IMG/VR virus record: IMGVR_UViG_3300026885_000050
Coordinates: 1 to 13,958 of that record
Direction: 5' to 3' (one strand)
Length of the DNA stretch: 13,958 bases
Position 1 is the first letter of the stretch. Each line of letters begins with the position of its first letter. Made by a program: the position numbers and the translations under genes. Under the pieces are notes generated by a model. It saw nothing but the letters and a program-made list of their open reading frames with translations, ran no database searches and was not told the origin of the DNA. This document shows positions 4,401-13,525 of the stretch, in pieces.

Positions 4401-5465
4401 ATGGCAAATATTATATATTACGTTTATCCACAACATCATGATGTTAGTTTTAAATTTGTAGCTAAAGAACATATAAAAATGCTAAAAGAGAGATATACAG
4501 TTTACGAAATCCCAGCTTTATCTTTCTATCAATTTACTCCTTTTCGTTACCCGATTTCTATAATTCATCCGTTCTTTTATTCAATGTGGCATTGGGGAAA
4601 AATAGAATTTTCTTTCTTTGAGCAATATAGAACTAAAACAAGTGCAATAATAGGCGTTGAAGTTGCTGACAGTGACAGAATTTCCGAGAAATTCATAGAT
4701 TATGCTAATAACTATGCTGATAGACTAATTGTAAATTCTGAATGGTCAGTTAAAACATTCAAGAACTCTGGTCTGAAAATTCCAATATTTAAAGTTGTAC
4801 ATAACTTTAACGAGAGACTTTTAGTAAAAGATGAGGAACTAAAAGTTGATGAACAAATTCGTTATATTGAGAAAATCAAAAATGAGAAGAAAATAAAACT
4901 AATTTTCATATCATTATGGCATTCTGATTATAGAAAAGGTGCAGATTTATTCCACAATATAGCTAGACAACTTCAGAAGGAAAGGAATGACATTTATTTT
5001 TTAGTAAAAAGTGGTGGGCCGAGGACAGATTTTCAAGACTTAAGAATGTTCAATCTGACTGGAAATACAGATTTTGATAACATTGTAAAGATGTATAGAA
5101 TTTCTGACTTATATCTTCTAACTAGCAGAGGTGGGAGTTTCGAGTTAAACGGTCTGGAAGCTTTTGTGTCAAAAATTCCAACAATCGCCACAAAAGGCGG
5201 GGCATGGGAAGAATATTTTCCTCCACAATTGAAAGATTTACTAATTGATTCTTGTAATTTCCCAACAATTCTTCCAAATAATCCAATTCATATAGGAAAA
5301 GGCGTAGAAATATGTATTGACAAAGCTGTGGATAAAGTTCTTGAAGTTTTAGACAATCTTGATGAATATAAAGCTAAAATTGAGGAAAATTATAATTTCT
5401 GGATTGAGAATTTTAGTTATAAAACTGTAAAAAAACAACTTTTTAATTCTTTAGATGGACTTTAA
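4401..5465 (+). CDS. GT-B (GT4 / group 1) glycosyltransferase (SIRV2 ORF356-like)
   Basis: ADRLIVNSEWS, RKGADL, SDLYLLTSRGGSFELNGLEAFVSKIPTIATKGG (GT4-type C-terminal donor-binding motif). SD GGTGA at 4389-4393. Confidence 0.9.
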   Translation: MANIIYYVYPQHHDVSFKFVAKEHIKMLKERYTVYEIPALSFYQFTPFRYPISIIHPFFYSMWHWGKIEFSFFEQYRTKTSAIIGVEVADSDRISEKFIDYANNYADRLIVNSEWSVKTFKNSGLKIPIFKVVHNFNERLLVKDEELKVDEQIRYIEKIKNEKKIKLIFISLWHSDYRKGADLFHNIARQLQKERNDIYFLVKSGGPRTDFQDLRMFNLTGNTDFDNIVKMYRISDLYLLTSRGGSFELNGLEAFVSKIPTIATKGGAWEEYFPPQLKDLLIDSCNFPTILPNNPIHIGKGVEICIDKAVDKVLEVLDNLDEYKAKIEENYNFWIENFSYKTVKKQLFNSLDGL

Positions 5466-5816
5466 AAATTCATGAACTTTTTGTAATTTATCTATATCTT
5501 TATTCTCCACTAATTTCTTAATTTCTTCATTTATCTCATCATATAAATTATTGATTTTGATTAATTCTAAAACTTCTTGAATTAACAAAATTGAGAATTT
5601 GTGAGTTTGTTCAACTATAGTATGGATTTTCTTAGCTAACTTTTCGCTATTGAATTTGTCAAATTCTATAGACAATACGGTATACGAATATTTTGCAATT
5701 ACTTTTTTCTCATTTAAAGTTATAAAAAGTCTGTATTTGTCTTCTACTATTATCTCAGCTTTATTGTTATTCAATCTTACGATTGTATTTTGTCTTAACT
5801 TTAATTCCCTAGTCAT
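5451..5816 (-). CDS. Hypothetical protein, 121 aa (start revised to MTRELK)
   Basis: The track start at 5882 is the GTCAT of the divergent promoter. A TATA-GTCAT element lies 18 nt upstream of ATG 5816. Overlaps the GT4 gene end by 15 nt convergently. Confidence 0.7.
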   Translation of the reverse strand: MTRELKLRQNTIVRLNNNKAEIIVEDKYRLFITLNEKKVIAKYSYTVLSIEFDKFNSEKLAKKIHTIVEQTHKFSILLIQEVLELIKINNLYDEINEEIKKLVENKDIDKLQKVHEFLKSI

Positions 5817-5834
5817 CAATATAATAAAAATATT

Positions 5835-5882
5835 ATGACATTTATATCTCTTTAAATTTTGAGTAATTCTTAAATTGGTCAT
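5835..5882. promoter_or_regulatory. Divergent pair of TATA-GTCAT promoters
   Basis: Minus strand: GATATAAATGTCAT (5835-5848) to ATG 5816. Plus strand: TTCTTAAATTGGTCAT (5867-5882) to ATG 5900. Confidence 0.7.
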
Positions 5883-7092: not shown

Positions 7093-8028
7093 ATGAAGTT
7101 AGTTTTCGGACTAAGTTCGCCGACTTCTTATATTTTAAAGACAAATTTTCCAATTCTAATTAATCAATTAAGATTTAGAACAAAGACATGGAAAAATGAG
7201 ACTTGGGTCGACAGCGGGGGCTATCAAATTACAATTCATGGTCTAGAAATCTCAGTTGATGACGTCTTACAAAAATACAAAATGATAGACGCTTATGCAT
7301 TTTTTTCTCTAGATATACCTAGCATATTTTCTCCACTTGATAAAAAGAATTTCGAATATTTCGAATATCTTTATACAAAAATTGAGTATATAGAAAAAAT
7401 TATACCAGTAATTCATATTTATCCAATTCAAGATATAGATGAAGCTATAGATTTTTATAAACAATATACTTATTATTTTGCAGTTGGAGGACTTATAGCA
7501 TCTTCAAAAATGAAAATTTTGATATATACTTTTCCGTGGATCTATTACATAAGGAGGAAGGTTCCATATCTTCACGTTCTAGGAATGTCAGCACCATATT
7601 TTATTCAAGCCTTTGACTTTGCTGAGAGCATGGACACAGCTACATATAGCAAAGTAACGGGCTATAGAGATATTTTTTGGTTTGATGGGTCTAGAAGATA
7701 TGTAGGCAATCAAAAGACAGTTAGGGAAAAATATAAACTTACTGAGGAAGAGAAAGAGAAACTTTTCGAATTTCTGGACAAGATTAATTTCCCATTCGAA
7801 TATGATTTATCAAACAGAAAAATTATAGAAGTTATGAACGCTTATATTCTAATATACAATAATTGGAAGATTGATAATAAATATACAAGATATGCTGACA
7901 AACTTAGGAAAATGGGACTAGACAGCCTTGTAATGGAGTTAATTAGAAATTATAAAATTGCTAATGAGATATTGAAAGAGAAAAGGAAAATAAAGAAAGA
8001 AGAAGATGAATTAGAACTTGAGATATAA
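7093..8028 (+). CDS. tRNA-guanine transglycosylase-like / DpdA-like protein (SIRV2 ORF310-like)
   Basis: TGT catalytic signature VDSGGYQ, then SLDIP, IIPVIH, FAVGG, LHVLG, SMDTAT (second catalytic Asp). Starts 2 nt after the permease stop. Confidence 0.85.
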   Translation: MKLVFGLSSPTSYILKTNFPILINQLRFRTKTWKNETWVDSGGYQITIHGLEISVDDVLQKYKMIDAYAFFSLDIPSIFSPLDKKNFEYFEYLYTKIEYIEKIIPVIHIYPIQDIDEAIDFYKQYTYYFAVGGLIASSKMKILIYTFPWIYYIRRKVPYLHVLGMSAPYFIQAFDFAESMDTATYSKVTGYRDIFWFDGSRRYVGNQKTVREKYKLTEEEKEKLFEFLDKINFPFEYDLSNRKIIEVMNAYILIYNNWKIDNKYTRYADKLRKMGLDSLVMELIRNYKIANEILKEKRKIKKEEDELELEI

Positions 8029-9951: not shown

Positions 9952-9965
9952 TTTTTTTGTTTTTT
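9952..9965 (+). terminator. Oligo-T terminator after the wHTH gene
   Basis: TTTTTTTGTTTTTT a few nt after TAA 9948. Confidence 0.55.
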
Positions 9966-10158
9966 AATGATGGAAACAATGACTCCATAAATCTACAAAA
10001 ATCCCGGTTATAATTATCAATTGAAAAATCACAATCAATTTTAGAATCTCGTTTTGAACAGAAAAGTAGAGAATAAAAGATAGAATAAAGAGAATTACTA
10101 AGCCATAAAGATCATGAGTTTTCCCGTGAAGGAAATAATATCACATTCTACAACTCAT
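9964..10158 (-). pseudogene. 64-codon two-TM membrane protein gene interrupted by in-frame TGA at codon 6 (pseudogene, sequencing error or readthrough)
   Basis: Translation MSCRM*YYFLHGKTHDLYGLVILFILSFILYFSVQNEILKLIVIFQLIIITGIFVDLWSHCFHH. TGA at 10141-10143. TATA-GTCAT promoter 16 nt upstream of the ATG. Confidence 0.7.
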
Positions 10159-10174
10159 AAATACAAGTTTAAAA

Positions 10175-10190
10175 ATGACAATTAAAAAGC
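10175..10190 (-). promoter_or_regulatory. TATA-GTCAT promoter for the interrupted 10158-9964 gene
   Basis: Minus strand GCTTTTTAATTGTCAT, 16 nt before the ATG. Confidence 0.65.
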
Positions 10191-10194
10191 TATT

Positions 10195-10209
10195 AAAAAA
10201 TTAAAAAAA
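10195..10209 (-). terminator. Oligo-T terminator of the five-gene acr operon
   Basis: Minus strand TTTTTTTAATTTTTT directly after TAA at 10212. Confidence 0.55.
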
Positions 10210-10211
10210 GA

Positions 10212-10535
10212 TTAATCTTCATAATATTCTATAATAAGTCTGTTTATCGGTATATCGTTTTCAGTTACTATTTTCATTGTTTCTCTTGGCTTTAAAACTA
10301 GCAATTGGAATAATTCGTCTAGATTTTTAACTCCTAATTCTTCATATGGTATAAAATAAATATCGAAAATTCCACGGCTATCTTCATGTTGGACTAGGCA
10401 ATATTTGTCTTGATAATCTGAGATATAACATGTATATTCATTAGTAAAGATAATTTCAAAATTATTCTTATGTTTAAAAATTATAATATCTCCAACTGTA
10501 TCGGCTAATTCAAAACATAATTTATAATTTCTCAT
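10212..10535 (-). CDS. Hypothetical acidic protein, 107 aa (anti-defence candidate)
   Basis: SD GGTGAG shortly before the ATG. Last gene of the operon with the AcrIIIB1-like genes. Confidence 0.8.
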   Translation of the reverse strand: MRNYKLCFELADTVGDIIIFKHKNNFEIIFTNEYTCYISDYQDKYCLVQHEDSRGIFDIYFIPYEELGVKNLDELFQLLVLKPRETMKIVTENDIPINRLIIEYYED

Positions 10536-10548
10536 TATCTCACCACAT

Positions 10549-10776
10549 TTATCTTTTACAAATTACATATTTCCAACCGTTATCATTTACTAATACAACT
10601 TCTCTTTTATTTTCTGGACATTGATCAATTGTTGATAAGGGTAATGCATAAGCTTTATAGTGATCACAACTATTTGTAAGCGGGAAATAATTAGACGTTT
10701 TTATTAATAATTCCCTATGACATATCGGACATTTATAAACAATTAAATCTCCAAATTTCTCAACTTTTAATTCCAT
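10549..10776 (-). CDS. Small putative Zn-binding protein (CPIC...SCDH), paralog 1, 75 aa
   Basis: SD GAGGTGA (contains the track's GTG) precedes ATG 10776 (MELKVEK). Motif shared with 13076-13330 and 13526-13801. Confidence 0.8.
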   Translation of the reverse strand: MELKVEKFGDLIVYKCPICHRELLIKTSNYFPLTNSCDHYKAYALPLSTIDQCPENKREVVLVNDNGWKYVICKR

Positions 10777-10788
10777 AACTTTCACCTC

Positions 10789-11481
10789 TTATTCTTGTTT
10801 TTTAGATTTTAAATATATAATTAAGTAATGTTTTTCCGGATTTAACATCACTTTGTTTTCTTGATTATCTGGAGTTTTTATTGTTAATTCTTTAACTCCT
10901 TTAGCATACATAAAATATGCTATATTCGGCTTTGAGATTAGACCGGTTATCTCAACATTTTTCGAAAACTTTAGCTCATAATTCTCAATTGTTAGTTCAT
11001 TTTTAATATCAAAATTAAGTTCATTGGTATATTTTAGCATTGGAGTTTCGTAAATTTCTAATTGCCTATTCTTATAAATCAACGGGAATTGGTATAATTG
11101 TCCTTTCACATATTTATCTAAAATCATTATTTGTTTTTCATCATAATTAATGAGCAATCTTTTTTCTTCCAAATCATAAAATTCTATAATTCTCATAATG
11201 AGGTCTGTCAAATCATTTAGATTTTCAGCAAATCTTCCACGTGAAGATATAAAGATTTTTGGCGGTGCAGTTATATAATATATGCCCCTAGCTTCTGCTA
11301 AAGCATAATTAATTAATTCATAACAACCGCTGAACTTTCTTCCAGATTTAGAAATATATTTTGCACAATCAATATAATCGCCTTGAACTGTACTAATCTT
11401 GGTAACTTGACCTTCTATATGTTTAACCATAAAGACTTTTGGAAGGTAATTTAGATATTTTAGAATTTTTACCTCAGACAT
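10789..11481 (-). CDS. acrIIIB1: Anti-CRISPR AcrIIIB1-like protein (SIRV2 gp48 family), paralog B
   Basis: EVKILKYLNYLPKVFM, DCAKYISKSGRKFSGC, RGIYY, LLINYD..I.ILDKYVKGQLYQFPLI match motifs I recall from SIRV2 gp48 (EVK.IK.LN.LP.VF; NCA.Y.SRSG....GC; GIYFTP; YD.Y.KG..Y.FPL). Full-length similarity to 11767-12489. Confidence 0.8.
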   Translation of the reverse strand: MSEVKILKYLNYLPKVFMVKHIEGQVTKISTVQGDYIDCAKYISKSGRKFSGCYELINYALAEARGIYYITAPPKIFISSRGRFAENLNDLTDLIMRIIEFYDLEEKRLLINYDEKQIMILDKYVKGQLYQFPLIYKNRQLEIYETPMLKYTNELNFDIKNELTIENYELKFSKNVEITGLISKPNIAYFMYAKGVKELTIKTPDNQENKVMLNPEKHYLIIYLKSKKQE

Positions 11482-11766: not shown

Positions 11767-12489
11767 CTAAGTCCTAGGTTTTGGGTGAGTTATTAAATAG
11801 TATTTGTTAACTTTTAGCATAACTGTATCTGTAGAACTTGTTGGCGATTTTAAAGTCAATGTCACTTCATTTTCCGGATGTATTAAAAATGCCACGCCGG
11901 GGTCTGAATATAAATCTCTAGTTAATGTAGGACTGGAAAACTGTATTTCGTGATGATAAATTGTTAGGCTATTGGAATGATTAAAACTAAGATTTAAATC
12001 ATTATTTATTGGCGGAACTTCATAAATTTCTAGATAATCTTGGTTGTATATTAGGTTAAATTGGTACAATTGACCTTTAATATAGTAATCGTAAATTGTT
12101 ATCGAATAATTATCATAGGAAATCAATAATTCTTTAAATCTGAGGTTTAGAAGTTCTATCTCTTTTAGTATAATGTTTTTCATATCCTCAAGACTTCTAG
12201 TAATTTTACTTCTTTTGTTAACTGAAAATATCGGTGGTGCTGGAGTATAATATATGCCTCTGGTCTGTAGAAGCTCATCTTCAAGATATTTAAAACAACC
12301 GCTGAAAGTTAATCTAGATCTTGAAATATAATTTGTGCAATTTTCGAAATATTTTGCTAATATTGAGATCTTGGTAACCTCACCATCAAGATGTTTTATC
12401 ATGAAGACTGATGGCAGATATTCTATTTGCTTTAGTATTTTTACTTCATATTTTTTAGTTTGACTTTCTTGACTTGAATTTTGAGACAT
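11767..12489 (-). CDS. acrIIIB1: Anti-CRISPR AcrIIIB1-like protein (SIRV2 gp48 family), paralog A
   Basis: EVKILKQIEYLPSVFM, NCTNYISRSRLTFSGC, GIYYTP, LLISYDNYSITIYDYYIKGQLYQF, PGVAFLIHPE and C-terminal THPKPR (recalled gp48 SHPRPR). SD GGGTGA upstream. Confidence 0.85.
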   Translation of the reverse strand: MSQNSSQESQTKKYEVKILKQIEYLPSVFMIKHLDGEVTKISILAKYFENCTNYISRSRLTFSGCFKYLEDELLQTRGIYYTPAPPIFSVNKRSKITRSLEDMKNIILKEIELLNLRFKELLISYDNYSITIYDYYIKGQLYQFNLIYNQDYLEIYEVPPINNDLNLSFNHSNSLTIYHHEIQFSSPTLTRDLYSDPGVAFLIHPENEVTLTLKSPTSSTDTVMLKVNKYYLITHPKPRT

Positions 12490-12522
12490 TTAATCTATCA
12501 CCCGCAAAATAACATATGCATT

Positions 12523-12545
12523 ATGACAAATTTAAAACTTCTTTT
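12523..12545 (-). promoter_or_regulatory. BRE-TATA-GTCAT promoter of the acr operon
   Basis: Minus strand AAAAGAAGTTTTAAATTTGTCAT, 33 nt before ATG 12489, with an SD in the leader. Confidence 0.7.
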
Positions 12546-12582
12546 ATCTTTCAAAAATTTTAACATTAATCATCATGACTTT

Positions 12583-12648
12583 GAATTTCTATGAATTTCG
12601 AATTTTTATCTACAAACTGAGAAAAATCGCTGATAGCTTTAGCTAAAT
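12583..12648. repeat. Partial copy of the intergenic cassette repeat
   Basis: GAATTTTTATCTACAAACTGAGAAAAAT...GCTAAAT versus GAATTTTTATCACAAAACTGAGAAAAAT (about 12998-13025) and GGCTAAAT (about 13493). Confidence 0.75.
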
Positions 12649-12707
12649 ATGGCCCGAAAAAAAGCAAACTAATGACTTTGAACTTGAAAACTAAAAAAAC
12701 GTTTAAC

Positions 12708-12875
12708 TTACCAACAGTCAGATAAATATTTCCTAACTGTCCTCTCTGTAACGCCTAAAAATGAGGCGATCTCTGCAATGCTATAACCTTGTCTTGCAAG
12801 CTCATGGACTATTGAAATCATATCGTCTCTCGAATTTATGTAATACTTTGTCTGACCGATTTGCACAACTTTCAT
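12708..12875 (-). CDS. HTH DNA-binding protein, SIRV1 ORF56a / SIRV2 Gp1 family, 55 aa
   Basis: MKVVQIGQTKYYINSRDDMISIVHELARQGYSIAEIASFLGVTERTVRKYLSDCW has a clear HTH and matches the recalled family pattern (YY..S.DD..S..HELA..GY....IA..LGV.ER.VR.YL..C). ATG 12875 preferred to TTG 12890. Confidence 0.85.
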   Translation of the reverse strand: MKVVQIGQTKYYINSRDDMISIVHELARQGYSIAEIASFLGVTERTVRKYLSDCW

Positions 12876-12910
12876 TTTCCTTTTCCCCAATTTACATTTT
12901 CATTTGCCCC

Positions 12911-13068
12911 TTTATAAAATTTTCTTTATGCTTTTGCCTTTACAAACTACGATTTCTTTATCGCTAAACACGTTATCTCTCAATTTCTTAACTTTCTGAA
13001 TTTTTATCACAAAACTGAGAAAAATTAAGCATAATTTAGGCAAATTAGAATTAGAAAAAATAAAAAAA
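12911..13068 (-). repeat. Intergenic cassette repeat copy A (terminator + conserved core + BRE/TATA promoter)
   Basis: Aligns end to end with 13365-13523 with a single 1-nt gap. Shared blocks TTTATAAA.TTTTCTTT, CGAT.TCTTTA.CGCTAAACA, TGAATTT.TATCACAAAACTGA.AAAAATT, GAATTAGAAAAAATAAAAAAA. Confidence 0.9.
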
Positions 13069-13075
13069 TATTAGC

Positions 13076-13330: not shown

Positions 13331-13364
13331 TTATTTCCCCCAATATTAATTATGTAACTTCTCA

Positions 13365-13523
13365 TTTATAAATTTTTCTTTGCATTTTTACATTTGCATT
13401 TTTCGATCTCTTTAACGCTAAACATGTAAACTCTGAATTTCTCAATTCTTTGAATTTCTATCACAAAACTGAAAAAAATTTCCCAGAATTATGGCTAAAT
13501 TGGAATTAGAAAAAATAAAAAAA
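13365..13523 (-). repeat. Intergenic cassette repeat copy B
   Basis: See copy A. The minus strand starts with terminator TTTTTTTATTTTTTCTAATT right after the 13526 stop and ends in AAAGAAAAATTTATAAA. Confidence 0.9.
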
Positions 13524-13525
13524 AC

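What the first reader, a model, noticed from the sequence alone, without database searches (positions are those of the whole stretch)
9964..10158. Hidden membrane-protein gene with TGA exactly where a CxxC cysteine is expected
Seen: a TATA-GTCAT promoter sits 16 nt before an ATG, close to the 17-18 nt spacing of four intact genes here. The frame reads MSCRM*YYFLHGKTHDLYG-TM1-QNEILK-TM2-DLWSHCFHH with a single TGA at codon 6 and no other lesion. One base change (TGT/TGC) gives CRMC. Cys/His clusters at both termini would fall on the same side of a two-TM hairpin, suggesting a metal-binding membrane protein. Inference: a recent knockout, a sequencing error, or programmed UGA readthrough. The gene is invisible to ordinary ORF calling.
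Basis: partly seen in the sequence, partly recalled or inferred. Interest (0 to 1): 0.65.

Follow-up and report, generated by a model that had tools for sequence, protein, structure and literature searches.

The report
Overlooked rudivirus membrane gene, nonsense allele
The hidden frame is a real, conserved 64-codon membrane-protein gene of rod-shaped archaeal viruses, and in this one hot-spring strain a tryptophan codon (not a cysteine codon) has mutated to a TGA stop, so this is most likely an ordinary recent knockout.

Summary
The sequence is as described: ATG 10158-10156, TGA 10143-10141 (codon 6), TAA 9966-9964 on the minus strand, behind an A/T-rich box plus GTCAT promoter.

**It is a real gene.**
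- The 58 codons after the stop match phrog_26913 (the AFV2 ORF202 family) at E 1.6e-19.
- Nine GenBank usarudiviruses and about 75 metagenome loci carry the same frame intact.
- Variable sites concentrate at third codon positions, and dN/dS is 0.05-0.10.
- The nine GenBank records leave the gene unannotated.

**The CxxC idea fails.**
- Codon 6 is TGG in 50 loci and TTT in 17. It is never Cys.
- TGA occurs in one strain only, found as three 100% identical contigs.

**The stop is real DNA.** Contigs from four sequencing runs cover it without a difference; two of those runs are not possible sources of the window.

**Nothing supports recoding.**
- No downstream RNA structure, SECIS element or tRNA gene was found.
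- TGA ends four other genes in the window.

**Best reading:** a recent TGG-to-TGA nonsense mutation in an accessory two-helix membrane protein. The family's invariant His and Asp residues suggest a metal site at the membrane surface. Leaky UGA-to-Trp decoding remains an untested minority option.

The parts
10175..10189 (-). Promoter: A/T-rich TATA-like box (TTTTTAATT) directly followed by GTCAT, 16 nt before the ATG. This spacing predicts a leaderless or nearly leaderless mRNA.
   Evidence: The block AATTGTCATTTTT is invariant in the window and nine GenBank relatives. A GTC element downstream of the TATA box is described for SIRV1/SIRV2 promoters (Kessler et al. 2004, as cited in PMC5569661). 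The transcription start is inferred, not mapped.
10156..10158 (-). ATG start codon
   Evidence: Conserved as ATG in all 9 GenBank usarudiviruses and in all 37 short-form metagenome loci.
10141..10143 (-). In-frame TGA at codon 6, replacing a conserved aromatic residue (Trp or Phe)
   Evidence: Relatives have TGG or TTT here. The stop is present without a difference in contigs of runs X1, X4, X5 and X6 and in two further identical JGI contigs.
9967..10140 (-). Remaining 58 sense codons of the gene (residues 7-64)
   Evidence: phrog_26913 E 1.6e-19. 84-91% identical to the usarudivirus orthologues. dN/dS against the nearest alleles is 0.05-0.10.
10102..10125 (-). N-terminal motif GKTHDLYG (residues 12-19) at the start of helix 1
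   Evidence: G12, T14, H15, D16, L17, Y18, G19 are invariant in 58 distinct viral sequences. G12, H15 and Y18 are invariant in the wider superfamily too.
10060..10110 (-). Transmembrane helix 1 (about residues 17-33)
   Evidence: Hydropathy of the nearest intact orthologue L040. The AlphaFold2 model, also built on that orthologue, has a helix at 15-33 with pLDDT above 90 in the core.
9994..10047 (-). Transmembrane helix 2 (about residues 38-55)
   Evidence: Hydropathy of the nearest intact orthologue L040. The AlphaFold2 model, also built on that orthologue, has a helix at 37-63.
9967..9996 (-). C-terminal motif VDLWSHCFHH (residues 55-64), which ends the protein
   Evidence: Invariant in the viral family except S/A at position 59. 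D56 and H60 are invariant and H64 nearly so in the wider superfamily.
9964..9966 (-). TAA stop codon
   Evidence: The protein ends directly after HCFHH in all nine GenBank usarudiviruses (TAA), in the IMG/VR loci (TAA, TGA or TAG) and in nearly every parsed metagenome locus.

Best explanation
Window 9964-10158 (minus strand) is a genuine, transcriptionally independent small gene of a Yellowstone-type rudivirus (genus Usarudivirus, near SIRV8). It belongs to the uncharacterised 'transmembrane protein ORF202' family (phrog_26913), which is found in rudiviruses and lipothrixviruses. The normal product is a 64-residue hairpin of two membrane helices. Its two ends lie on the same side of the membrane and carry the invariant polar residues H15/D16 and D56/H60/H64, plus C3, C61 and H63 in the viral branch. 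I infer that these residues form a metal-binding or catalytic site at the membrane surface. In this strain the sixth codon, a conserved Trp codon TGG, has changed to TGA by one G-to-A transition (C-to-T on the plus strand). The change is real in the DNA. It is private to one strain, and the rest of the gene has not yet decayed. With no in-frame start codon before codon 41, the allele most likely makes no protein. It is therefore a recent knockout of a dispensable accessory gene in the variable arm of the genome. Shown: the gene, the family membership, the Trp/Phe identity of the site, and the reality and privacy of the stop. Inferred: leaderless transcription, loss of function, the metal site, and dispensability.
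For: 1. The gene is real.
- The frame is open, with conserved ATG and TAA and no indels, in nine GenBank usarudiviruses.
- Variable columns by codon position are 20/9/37.
- NG86 dN/dS of the window allele against its nearest alleles is 0.05-0.10, and the pooled pN/pS is 0.20.
- Matches: phrog_26913 E 1.6e-19; family profile against the window E 1.7e-36, single copy, one TGA inside.
- Annotated homologues exist: ARV2 ALG96891, ARV3 gp22, SMRV1 gp31 and the AFV2 ORF202 C-terminus.

2. The lost residue is aromatic.
- Of 78 metagenome loci, codon 6 is TGG in 50, TTT in 17 and TGA in 3.
- Every short-form (rudiviral) allele with Arg at codon 4, as the window has, carries TGG.

3. The stop is private.
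- The three TGA loci are the window itself and two contigs that are 100% identical to it over 2574 nt.
- No other locus has any in-frame stop.
- The nearest other strain (92.9% nucleotide identity) is intact.

4. The stop is real in the DNA.
- Contigs with depths of 6.65-277 from four runs of four samples cover 10141-10143 with zero differences.
- X5 and X6 are not flagged as possible sources.
- The X6 contig diverges from 10604 onward, so a second genomic background carries the same TGA.

5. TGA is a normal stop here.
- It ends 4 of the 19 other ORFs, and Trp is written TGG 36 times.

6. No recoding apparatus was found.
- RNA folding downstream of the stop gives z = -0.48.
- There is no tRNA gene and no Rfam or SECIS match.

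7. Structure.
- The AlphaFold2 model on 58 sequences has pLDDT 82 and helices at 5-10, 15-33 and 37-63.
Against: - The allele shows no decay beyond the stop, which a translated gene would also show.
- It is the abundant form in several samples and sits in two genomic backgrounds, so it is not being purged quickly. That fits dispensability, but it equally fits residual expression.
- Logan contigs drop rare variants, so a minor TGG subpopulation cannot be excluded.
- The contig is only about 43% of a genome, so an intact second copy elsewhere is not excluded, although complete relatives carry one copy each.
- There are no RNA or protein data.
- The metal-site function rests on conservation alone.
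Confidence: 0.8

Rival explanations
1. Leaky or programmed UGA readthrough. The host tRNA-Trp (anticodon CCA) occasionally decodes the UGA at codon 6 and restores exactly the ancestral Trp, so a low level of wild-type protein is still made and the allele is tolerated or even selected.
For: - TGA is one step from TGG, so near-cognate decoding would rebuild the native protein.
- The frame after the stop is undamaged, with dN/dS 0.05-0.10.
- The allele is abundant in four runs and stands in two genomic backgrounds.
Against: - The stop is not conserved: 3 of 78 loci carry it, and all three are one identical strain.
- There is no stimulatory structure (z = -0.48), no suppressor tRNA and no Rfam element.
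- TGA terminates four other genes of the same contig.
- In Archaea, readthrough has been demonstrated only for Sec and Pyl insertion (review PMC8211752).
- An undecayed frame is also what a very recent mutation would look like.
Confidence: 0.1
2. Sequencing or assembly error: the true sequence is TGG and the gene is ordinary.
For: A single-base difference in an A/T-rich metagenome contig. The runs are available only as contigs, which hide minor variants.
Against: - The same base stands in contigs of four runs at depths 6.65-277 with no alternative letter reported at a 1% threshold.
- It also stands in three separately assembled JGI contigs.
- Two of the runs (X5, X6) are not possible sources of the window.
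Confidence: 0.02
3. One reading: the UGA stands for a cysteine of a CxxC metal motif, either as a lost Cys codon or as selenocysteine.
For: C3 is invariant in the viral family, and TGA is one step from TGT or TGC.
Against: - No relative has Cys at codon 6; they have W, F, or rarely M/I/V/L/R.
- No SECIS-like element was found.
- From general knowledge, selenocysteine machinery is not known in Sulfolobales.
- C3 and C61 are not conserved in the wider superfamily.
Confidence: 0.01
4. Chance open frame in an intergenic spacer, conserved only as DNA (promoter or terminator region), not as a protein.
For: An open run of 58 codons arises in 13% of shuffles of this gap. The region is unannotated in nine GenBank genomes.
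Against: - Variation concentrates at third codon positions, 20/9/37, and dN/dS is about 0.05-0.2.
- There are no indels in 64 codons across relatives that differ by about 20% in nucleotide sequence.
- Protein-level homologues at 48-59% identity occur in other genera and another family, where they are annotated genes.
- The same module forms the C-terminus of 188-202 aa proteins.
Confidence: 0.01

Closest known systems
phrog_26913, the 'putative transmembrane protein ORF202' family (AFV2 ORF202 CAH69436; ARV2 ALG96891; ARV3 gp22 QJF12335, annotated 'putative viral structural protein'; SMRV1 gp31 YP_006990109)
   Same: The same 60-65 residue module: C-x-M-(W/F)-x-Y-F, GKTHDLYG, two hydrophobic helices, and a VDLW(S/A)HCFHH C-terminus. 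E-values are 1.6e-19 to 5e-133 against the PHROG model. The family occurs only in Ligamenvirales viruses and a handful of metagenome clusters.
   Different: The window copy carries a stop at codon 6. The usarudivirus orthologues are not annotated at all in GenBank. AFV2-type members are 188-202 aa, with about four extra helices and a second conserved motif. No member has a tested function. I could not trace the basis of the ARV3 'structural' label.
Rudiviral promoters with a GTC element after the TATA box (Kessler et al. 2004, as cited in PMC5569661)
   Same: An A/T-rich box directly followed by GTC(AT), invariant among relatives and shared with at least eight other ORFs of the window.
   Different: The spacing to the ATG is 16 nt here, against 17 nt in three genes and 24-33 nt in five. 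No transcription start has been mapped for this gene.
Near-cognate UGA suppression by tRNA-Trp and stop-codon recoding in Archaea (Sec, Pyl; review PMC8211752)
   Same: A UGA at a position where relatives have UGG.
   Different: The stop is not conserved, no cis element was found, no archaeal precedent exists outside Sec and Pyl, and there is no expression evidence.
Distant small two-helix proteins with H-(D/V)-x-Y-G ... D-L-W-A-H-x-x-x-H, including hypothetical proteins of Thermoplasmatales MAGs and one genome (for example OWP56498.1, QRF75240.1)
   Same: The same hairpin layout, with invariant G12, H15, Y18, L20, D56, H60 and nearly invariant H64.
   Different: Only 31-42% identical. They lack C3, C61 and H63. 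Some are tandem duplications of 129-145 aa. The Thermoplasmatales members lie on contigs of up to 1.96 Mb, that is in cellular genomes. All are uncharacterised.

Membership tests
phrog_26913 / ORF202 transmembrane protein family | Significant profile match over the whole module | tested here: met
   E 1.6e-19 for residues 7-64 against profile positions 145-202. Family profile A4 against the window: E 1.7e-36 over positions 1-64.
phrog_26913 / ORF202 transmembrane protein family | Invariant motifs GKTHDLYG and VDLW(S/A)HCFHH, the latter at the extreme C-terminus | tested here: met
   Both are present unchanged in the window.
phrog_26913 / ORF202 transmembrane protein family | Two hydrophobic helices between the motifs | tested here: met
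   Hydropathy peaks at residues 17-34 and 38-55 of the nearest intact orthologue L040. The AlphaFold2 model, also built on that orthologue, has helices at 15-33 and 37-63 with pLDDT 82.
phrog_26913 / ORF202 transmembrane protein family | Uninterrupted reading frame | tested here: not met
   TGA at codon 6. All other 75 readable metagenome loci and nine GenBank genomes are intact. The window copy is therefore a member by descent but a disrupted allele.
Programmed stop-codon readthrough | The stop codon is conserved at the site among relatives | tested here: not met
   TGA occurs only in three identical contigs of one strain, against 50 TGG and 17 TTT.
Programmed stop-codon readthrough | A stimulatory RNA element or special tRNA | tested here: not met
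   Folding z = -0.48. No tRNA gene. No Rfam family.
Programmed stop-codon readthrough | A full-length product is made | not testable with these tools
   No RNA run holds the stretch, and no proteomic data are available.
Selenoprotein / CxxC (CxxU) redox or metal motif | Cys in homologues at the UGA position, plus a SECIS element | tested here: not met
   Homologues have W or F, never C. No SECIS match.
Rudivirus TATA + GTC promoter | An A/T-rich TATA-like box immediately followed by GTC, upstream of the start codon | tested here: met
   TTTTTAATTGTCAT ends 16 nt before the ATG. It is invariant in ten genomes. The motif is described in PMC5569661.
Rudivirus TATA + GTC promoter | A mapped transcription start downstream of the box | not testable with these tools
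   No RNA data are available.

The most novel reading that the evidence does not exclude
The UGA at codon 6 is decoded as Trp by near-cognate host tRNA-Trp often enough to keep this small membrane protein functional. That would make it a natural example of non-Sec, non-Pyl stop-codon readthrough in a crenarchaeal virus, tolerated at high frequency in a hot-spring population.
Probability: 0.07. Interest if true: 0.6.

Novelty: new member of a known kind. Interest (0 to 1): 0.3.

Why it matters
Three modest points.

1. **Annotation.** A conserved 64-codon gene with its own promoter is missing from the nine GenBank usarudivirus records examined (SIRV4, 5, 6, 7, 8, 11, V3, V60, V65). In SIRV8 an opposite-strand ORF is annotated over it. 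Comparative studies of SIRV core and variable genes have therefore not counted it.

2. **A small family to characterise.** The family is tiny, with 37 representative clusters among 1.84 billion proteins. It spans rudiviruses, lipothrixviruses and some Thermoplasmatales. It has an invariant His/Asp set at the ends of a two-helix hairpin. That makes it a compact candidate for a metal-binding or catalytic membrane module in archaeal virus biology.

3. **A natural knockout.** The nonsense allele is abundant in several hot-spring samples. It offers a natural test of whether the gene is dispensable, and a convenient natural substrate for measuring UGA leakiness in Sulfolobales.

None of this overturns current understanding.

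Tried and rejected
- **Pfam.** No family was near its cutoff for the short or long form, and none for ten neighbouring proteins.
- **Foldseek of the short-form model against the PDB.** No match at E 0.001 or better, only generic helical hairpins.
- **AlphaFold2 of the 188-aa long form.** pLDDT 68.6 and pTM 0.45, too poor for a fold search, so none was run. The Atlas structure neighbours all had TM 0.5 or lower and no names.
- **Split-gene idea.** I tested whether the upstream 107-aa gene (10212-10535) or SMRV1 orf30 matches the N-terminal half of the long form. They do not (hhalign probability 0.1).
- **Recoding signals.** RNA structure after the stop, tRNA genes and Rfam families all gave nothing.
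- **Bacterial-type promoter and terminator scan.** Not informative for an archaeal virus.
- **Literature.** No paper holds both 'ORF202' and 'AFV2'. The ARV3 preprint does not explain the 'structural protein' label. The V3/V60/V65 paper does not mention nonsense mutations or small ORFs.
- **Word-based protein search.** It found only seven unnamed clusters.
- **Genetic code.** I did not read the TGA through under another genetic code, because the genome gives no sign of one. Searches used the 58 codons after the stop or intact orthologues by reference.

Full report
**What the window is.** The 13,958-nt window is a whole IMG/VR record, about 43% of a genome. It has 22-30% G+C and belongs to a rod-shaped virus of Sulfolobus, genus Usarudivirus. 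The stretch around the finding is 80-88% identical to SIRV8, SIRV4-7, SIRV11 and the Yellowstone isolates V3, V60 and V65. The finding lies in the variable right-hand part of the genome. Its neighbours match only PHROG families of unknown function or none at all.

**The observation.**
- The minus strand reads ATG AGT TGT AGA ATG TGA, then 58 sense codons and TAA. The coordinates are ATG 10158-10156, TGA 10143-10141 and TAA 9966-9964.
- No ORF of 40 aa or more is listed between 9949 and 10211, so the gene is invisible to ORF calling.
- After the TGA, the first in-frame ATG, GTG or TTG is the TTG at codon 41, so a shortened product is not plausible.
- The upstream gene ends at 10212 and is followed by T-runs. 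Then comes TTTTTAATT-GTCAT (10189-10175), 16 nt before the ATG.
- The same box-plus-GTCAT arrangement precedes eight other ORFs of the window. It sits at 17 nt in three of them and at 24-33 nt in five.
- A GTC element after the TATA box is the published hallmark of SIRV1/SIRV2 promoters (Kessler et al. 2004, as cited in PMC5569661).
- An open run of 58 codons in this gap is not improbable by itself. It arises in 13% of shuffles.

**It is a real gene.**
- Nine GenBank usarudiviruses align over the whole block without a single indel in the 64 codons. All have a conserved ATG, a conserved TAA and an invariant AATTGTCATTTTT promoter core.
- Variable alignment columns fall 20/9/37 on codon positions 1/2/3.
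- Nei-Gojobori dN/dS between the window allele and its nearest alleles is 0.05-0.10. The pooled pN/pS over 29 distinct alleles is 0.20.
- The 58 residues after the stop match phrog_26913 at E 1.6e-19. A profile of 58 distinct family members finds the window at E 1.7e-36, as a single copy with one TGA inside.
- tblastn finds homologues at 48-57% identity in ARV2, ARV3, SMRV1 and the lipothrixvirus AFV2. Against the window's own 58 residues these are 48-59% identical. There they are annotated genes: a 60-aa hypothetical protein, gp22 'putative viral structural protein', gp31, and the C-terminus of ORF202.
- None of the nine usarudivirus records annotates the gene. SIRV8 instead has an opposite-strand 'ORF55' lying over its 5' part.

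**What stands at codon 6.**
- The GenBank relatives have TTT (SIRV4-8, SIRV11) or TGG (V3, V60, V65).
- Among 18 IMG/VR loci and 80 metagenome loci, 78 can be read at that codon. The counts are TGG 50, TTT 17 and TGA 3, plus a few ATG, ATA, GTG, TTG, CGG or CGA in distant long forms. Cysteine never occurs, so the CxxC premise fails.
- All short-form (rudiviral) alleles with Arg at codon 4, as the window has, carry TGG. The ancestral codon was therefore almost certainly TGG. The lesion is one G-to-A transition, which is C-to-T on the plus strand.
- In the model, residue 6 lies in a short N-terminal helix (residues 5-10) rich in aromatic residues. I infer that this is an interfacial anchor.

**Is the stop real, and how widespread is it?**
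- The three TGA loci are the window itself (Ga0208662_100536) and two contigs from other assemblies (Ga0208683_100854, Ga0208314_101107). All three are 100% identical over 2574 nt, so they are one strain.
- The next nearest strain (L040, 92.9% nucleotide identity) is intact with TTT.
- No other locus has any in-frame stop.
- Contigs from four public runs of four samples cover 10141-10143 with zero differences. Their depths are 129, 277, 33 and 6.65.
- X1 and X4 may be the source of the window, but X5 and X6 are not flagged as such.
- The X6 contig departs from the window from 10604 onward (18 differences and 2 indels), so the same TGA sits in a second, recombinant genomic background.
- This excludes a read or assembly error. 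Contigs can still hide a minority TGG variant. No RNA run holds the region.

**Recoding?**
- TGA terminates 4 of the 19 other ORFs of the window, and Trp is written TGG 36 times.
- The 100 nt from the start codon onward fold no better than shuffles (z = -0.48).
- There is no tRNA gene and no Rfam match, which includes SECIS families.
- In Archaea, readthrough has been demonstrated only for Sec and Pyl insertion (PMC8211752).
- The stop is private to one strain, which is the opposite of what programmed readthrough predicts.
- What remains in favour of residual decoding is weak. Near-cognate tRNA-Trp would rebuild the native protein. The downstream frame is undamaged. The allele is abundant in several samples. 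A young null allele of a dispensable gene explains the same facts.

**What the protein is.**
- The family has two architectures. One is a 60-68 aa form in rudiviruses. The other is a 188-199 aa form in other contigs from the same springs, which I presume to be lipothrixviruses. The long form resembles AFV2 ORF202 and carries the module at its C-terminus.
- Within 58 distinct viral sequences, C3, G12, T14-L20, F54-W58, H60, C61, F62, H63 and H64 are invariant.
- An exhaustive profile search of 1.84 billion representatives finds only 37 clusters. These include hypothetical proteins of Thermoplasmatales and tandem-duplicated forms.
- Across this wider set, G12, H15, Y18, L20, D56 and H60 are invariant, and G19, L57 and H64 nearly so.
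- Hydropathy and an AlphaFold2 model (pLDDT 82) give a hairpin of helices 15-33 and 37-63 joined by a three-residue turn. H15/D16 and D56/H60/H64 therefore lie at the same membrane face.
- I infer a metal-binding or catalytic site there. It is not tested.
- Pfam, PDB fold search and Atlas neighbours give no functional lead. The long-form model is too poor to search.

**Verdict.** The finding is a real, overlooked gene of a known but uncharacterised viral family. In this strain it carries a genuine, private TGG-to-TGA nonsense mutation at a conserved aromatic residue. The most likely mechanism is simple loss of an accessory membrane protein (confidence about 0.8). Leaky UGA-to-Trp decoding is a minority alternative (about 0.1) that only expression data can settle. 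Novelty is low: a new, broken member of a known kind plus an annotation gap in nine published genomes. 

Noticed in passing
L007:341-487 (SIRV8 KY744229.1 33377-33523) and the homologous blocks in L006-L014: The intact 64-codon orthologue is unannotated in all nine GenBank usarudivirus records examined. SIRV8 instead has a 48-aa 'ORF55' annotated on the opposite strand over the gene's 5' part, which is probably a miscall.
   Followed up: partly
L026:1111-1677, L030:1111-1677, L081:811-1374 and others (alignment A5): A long architecture of 188-199 aa carries the same module at its C-terminus. It also has a second invariant motif (S-M-x-x-E-D-x-x-Y-W ... Y-A-W-Y-Y-P-V-x-x-H-I-P-x-x-D) in about four extra helices. 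Shorter ORFs of 127-133 aa also occur, running from the first ATG.
   Followed up: partly
Proteins P0026, P0027, P0028, P0031, P0041: Distant relatives of 129-145 aa hold two tandem copies of the hairpin module. In the second copy the C-terminal motif is degraded to R-F-Y-H.
   Followed up: no
P0019 cluster: A 73-aa distant relative sits in Thermoplasmatales MAGs and on a 1.96-Mb contig. The superfamily therefore reaches cellular (or proviral) genomes of another archaeal phylum.
   Followed up: no
window 10604-10700: In run X6 a contig is identical to the window from 10061 to 10603, TGA included. It then differs at 18 positions plus 2 indels within gene 10549-10785, which looks like a recombination junction between strains.
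   Followed up: no
window 10789-11481 and 11767-12489 (minus strand): Two paralogous genes of phrog_6092 (230 and 240 aa, E 5e-46 and 2.5e-78) are separated by a 92-aa ORF. The SIRV8 layout differs: there the hidden gene is followed directly by the 240-aa type.
   Followed up: no
window 7093-8028 (plus strand): A 311-aa protein matches the queuine tRNA-ribosyltransferase PHROG (phrog_887, E 5e-65), the rudiviral tRNA-guanine transglycosylase-like core gene.
   Followed up: no
window 12490-13075 and 13331-13525: Two further stretches lack any long ORF. Window 12681-12951 matches, at 67-73% nucleotide identity, genes of relatives annotated as hypothetical, helix-turn-helix or (in RefSeq) 'terminase small subunit'. 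The 68-aa ORF at 12761-12967 (plus strand) may be that gene.
   Followed up: partly
window 5839-5835 (minus strand): An A/T-rich box plus GTCAT lies inside the annotated 5' part of ORF 5451-5882, with an ATG 22 nt downstream. This may be an internal or alternative promoter and start.
   Followed up: no
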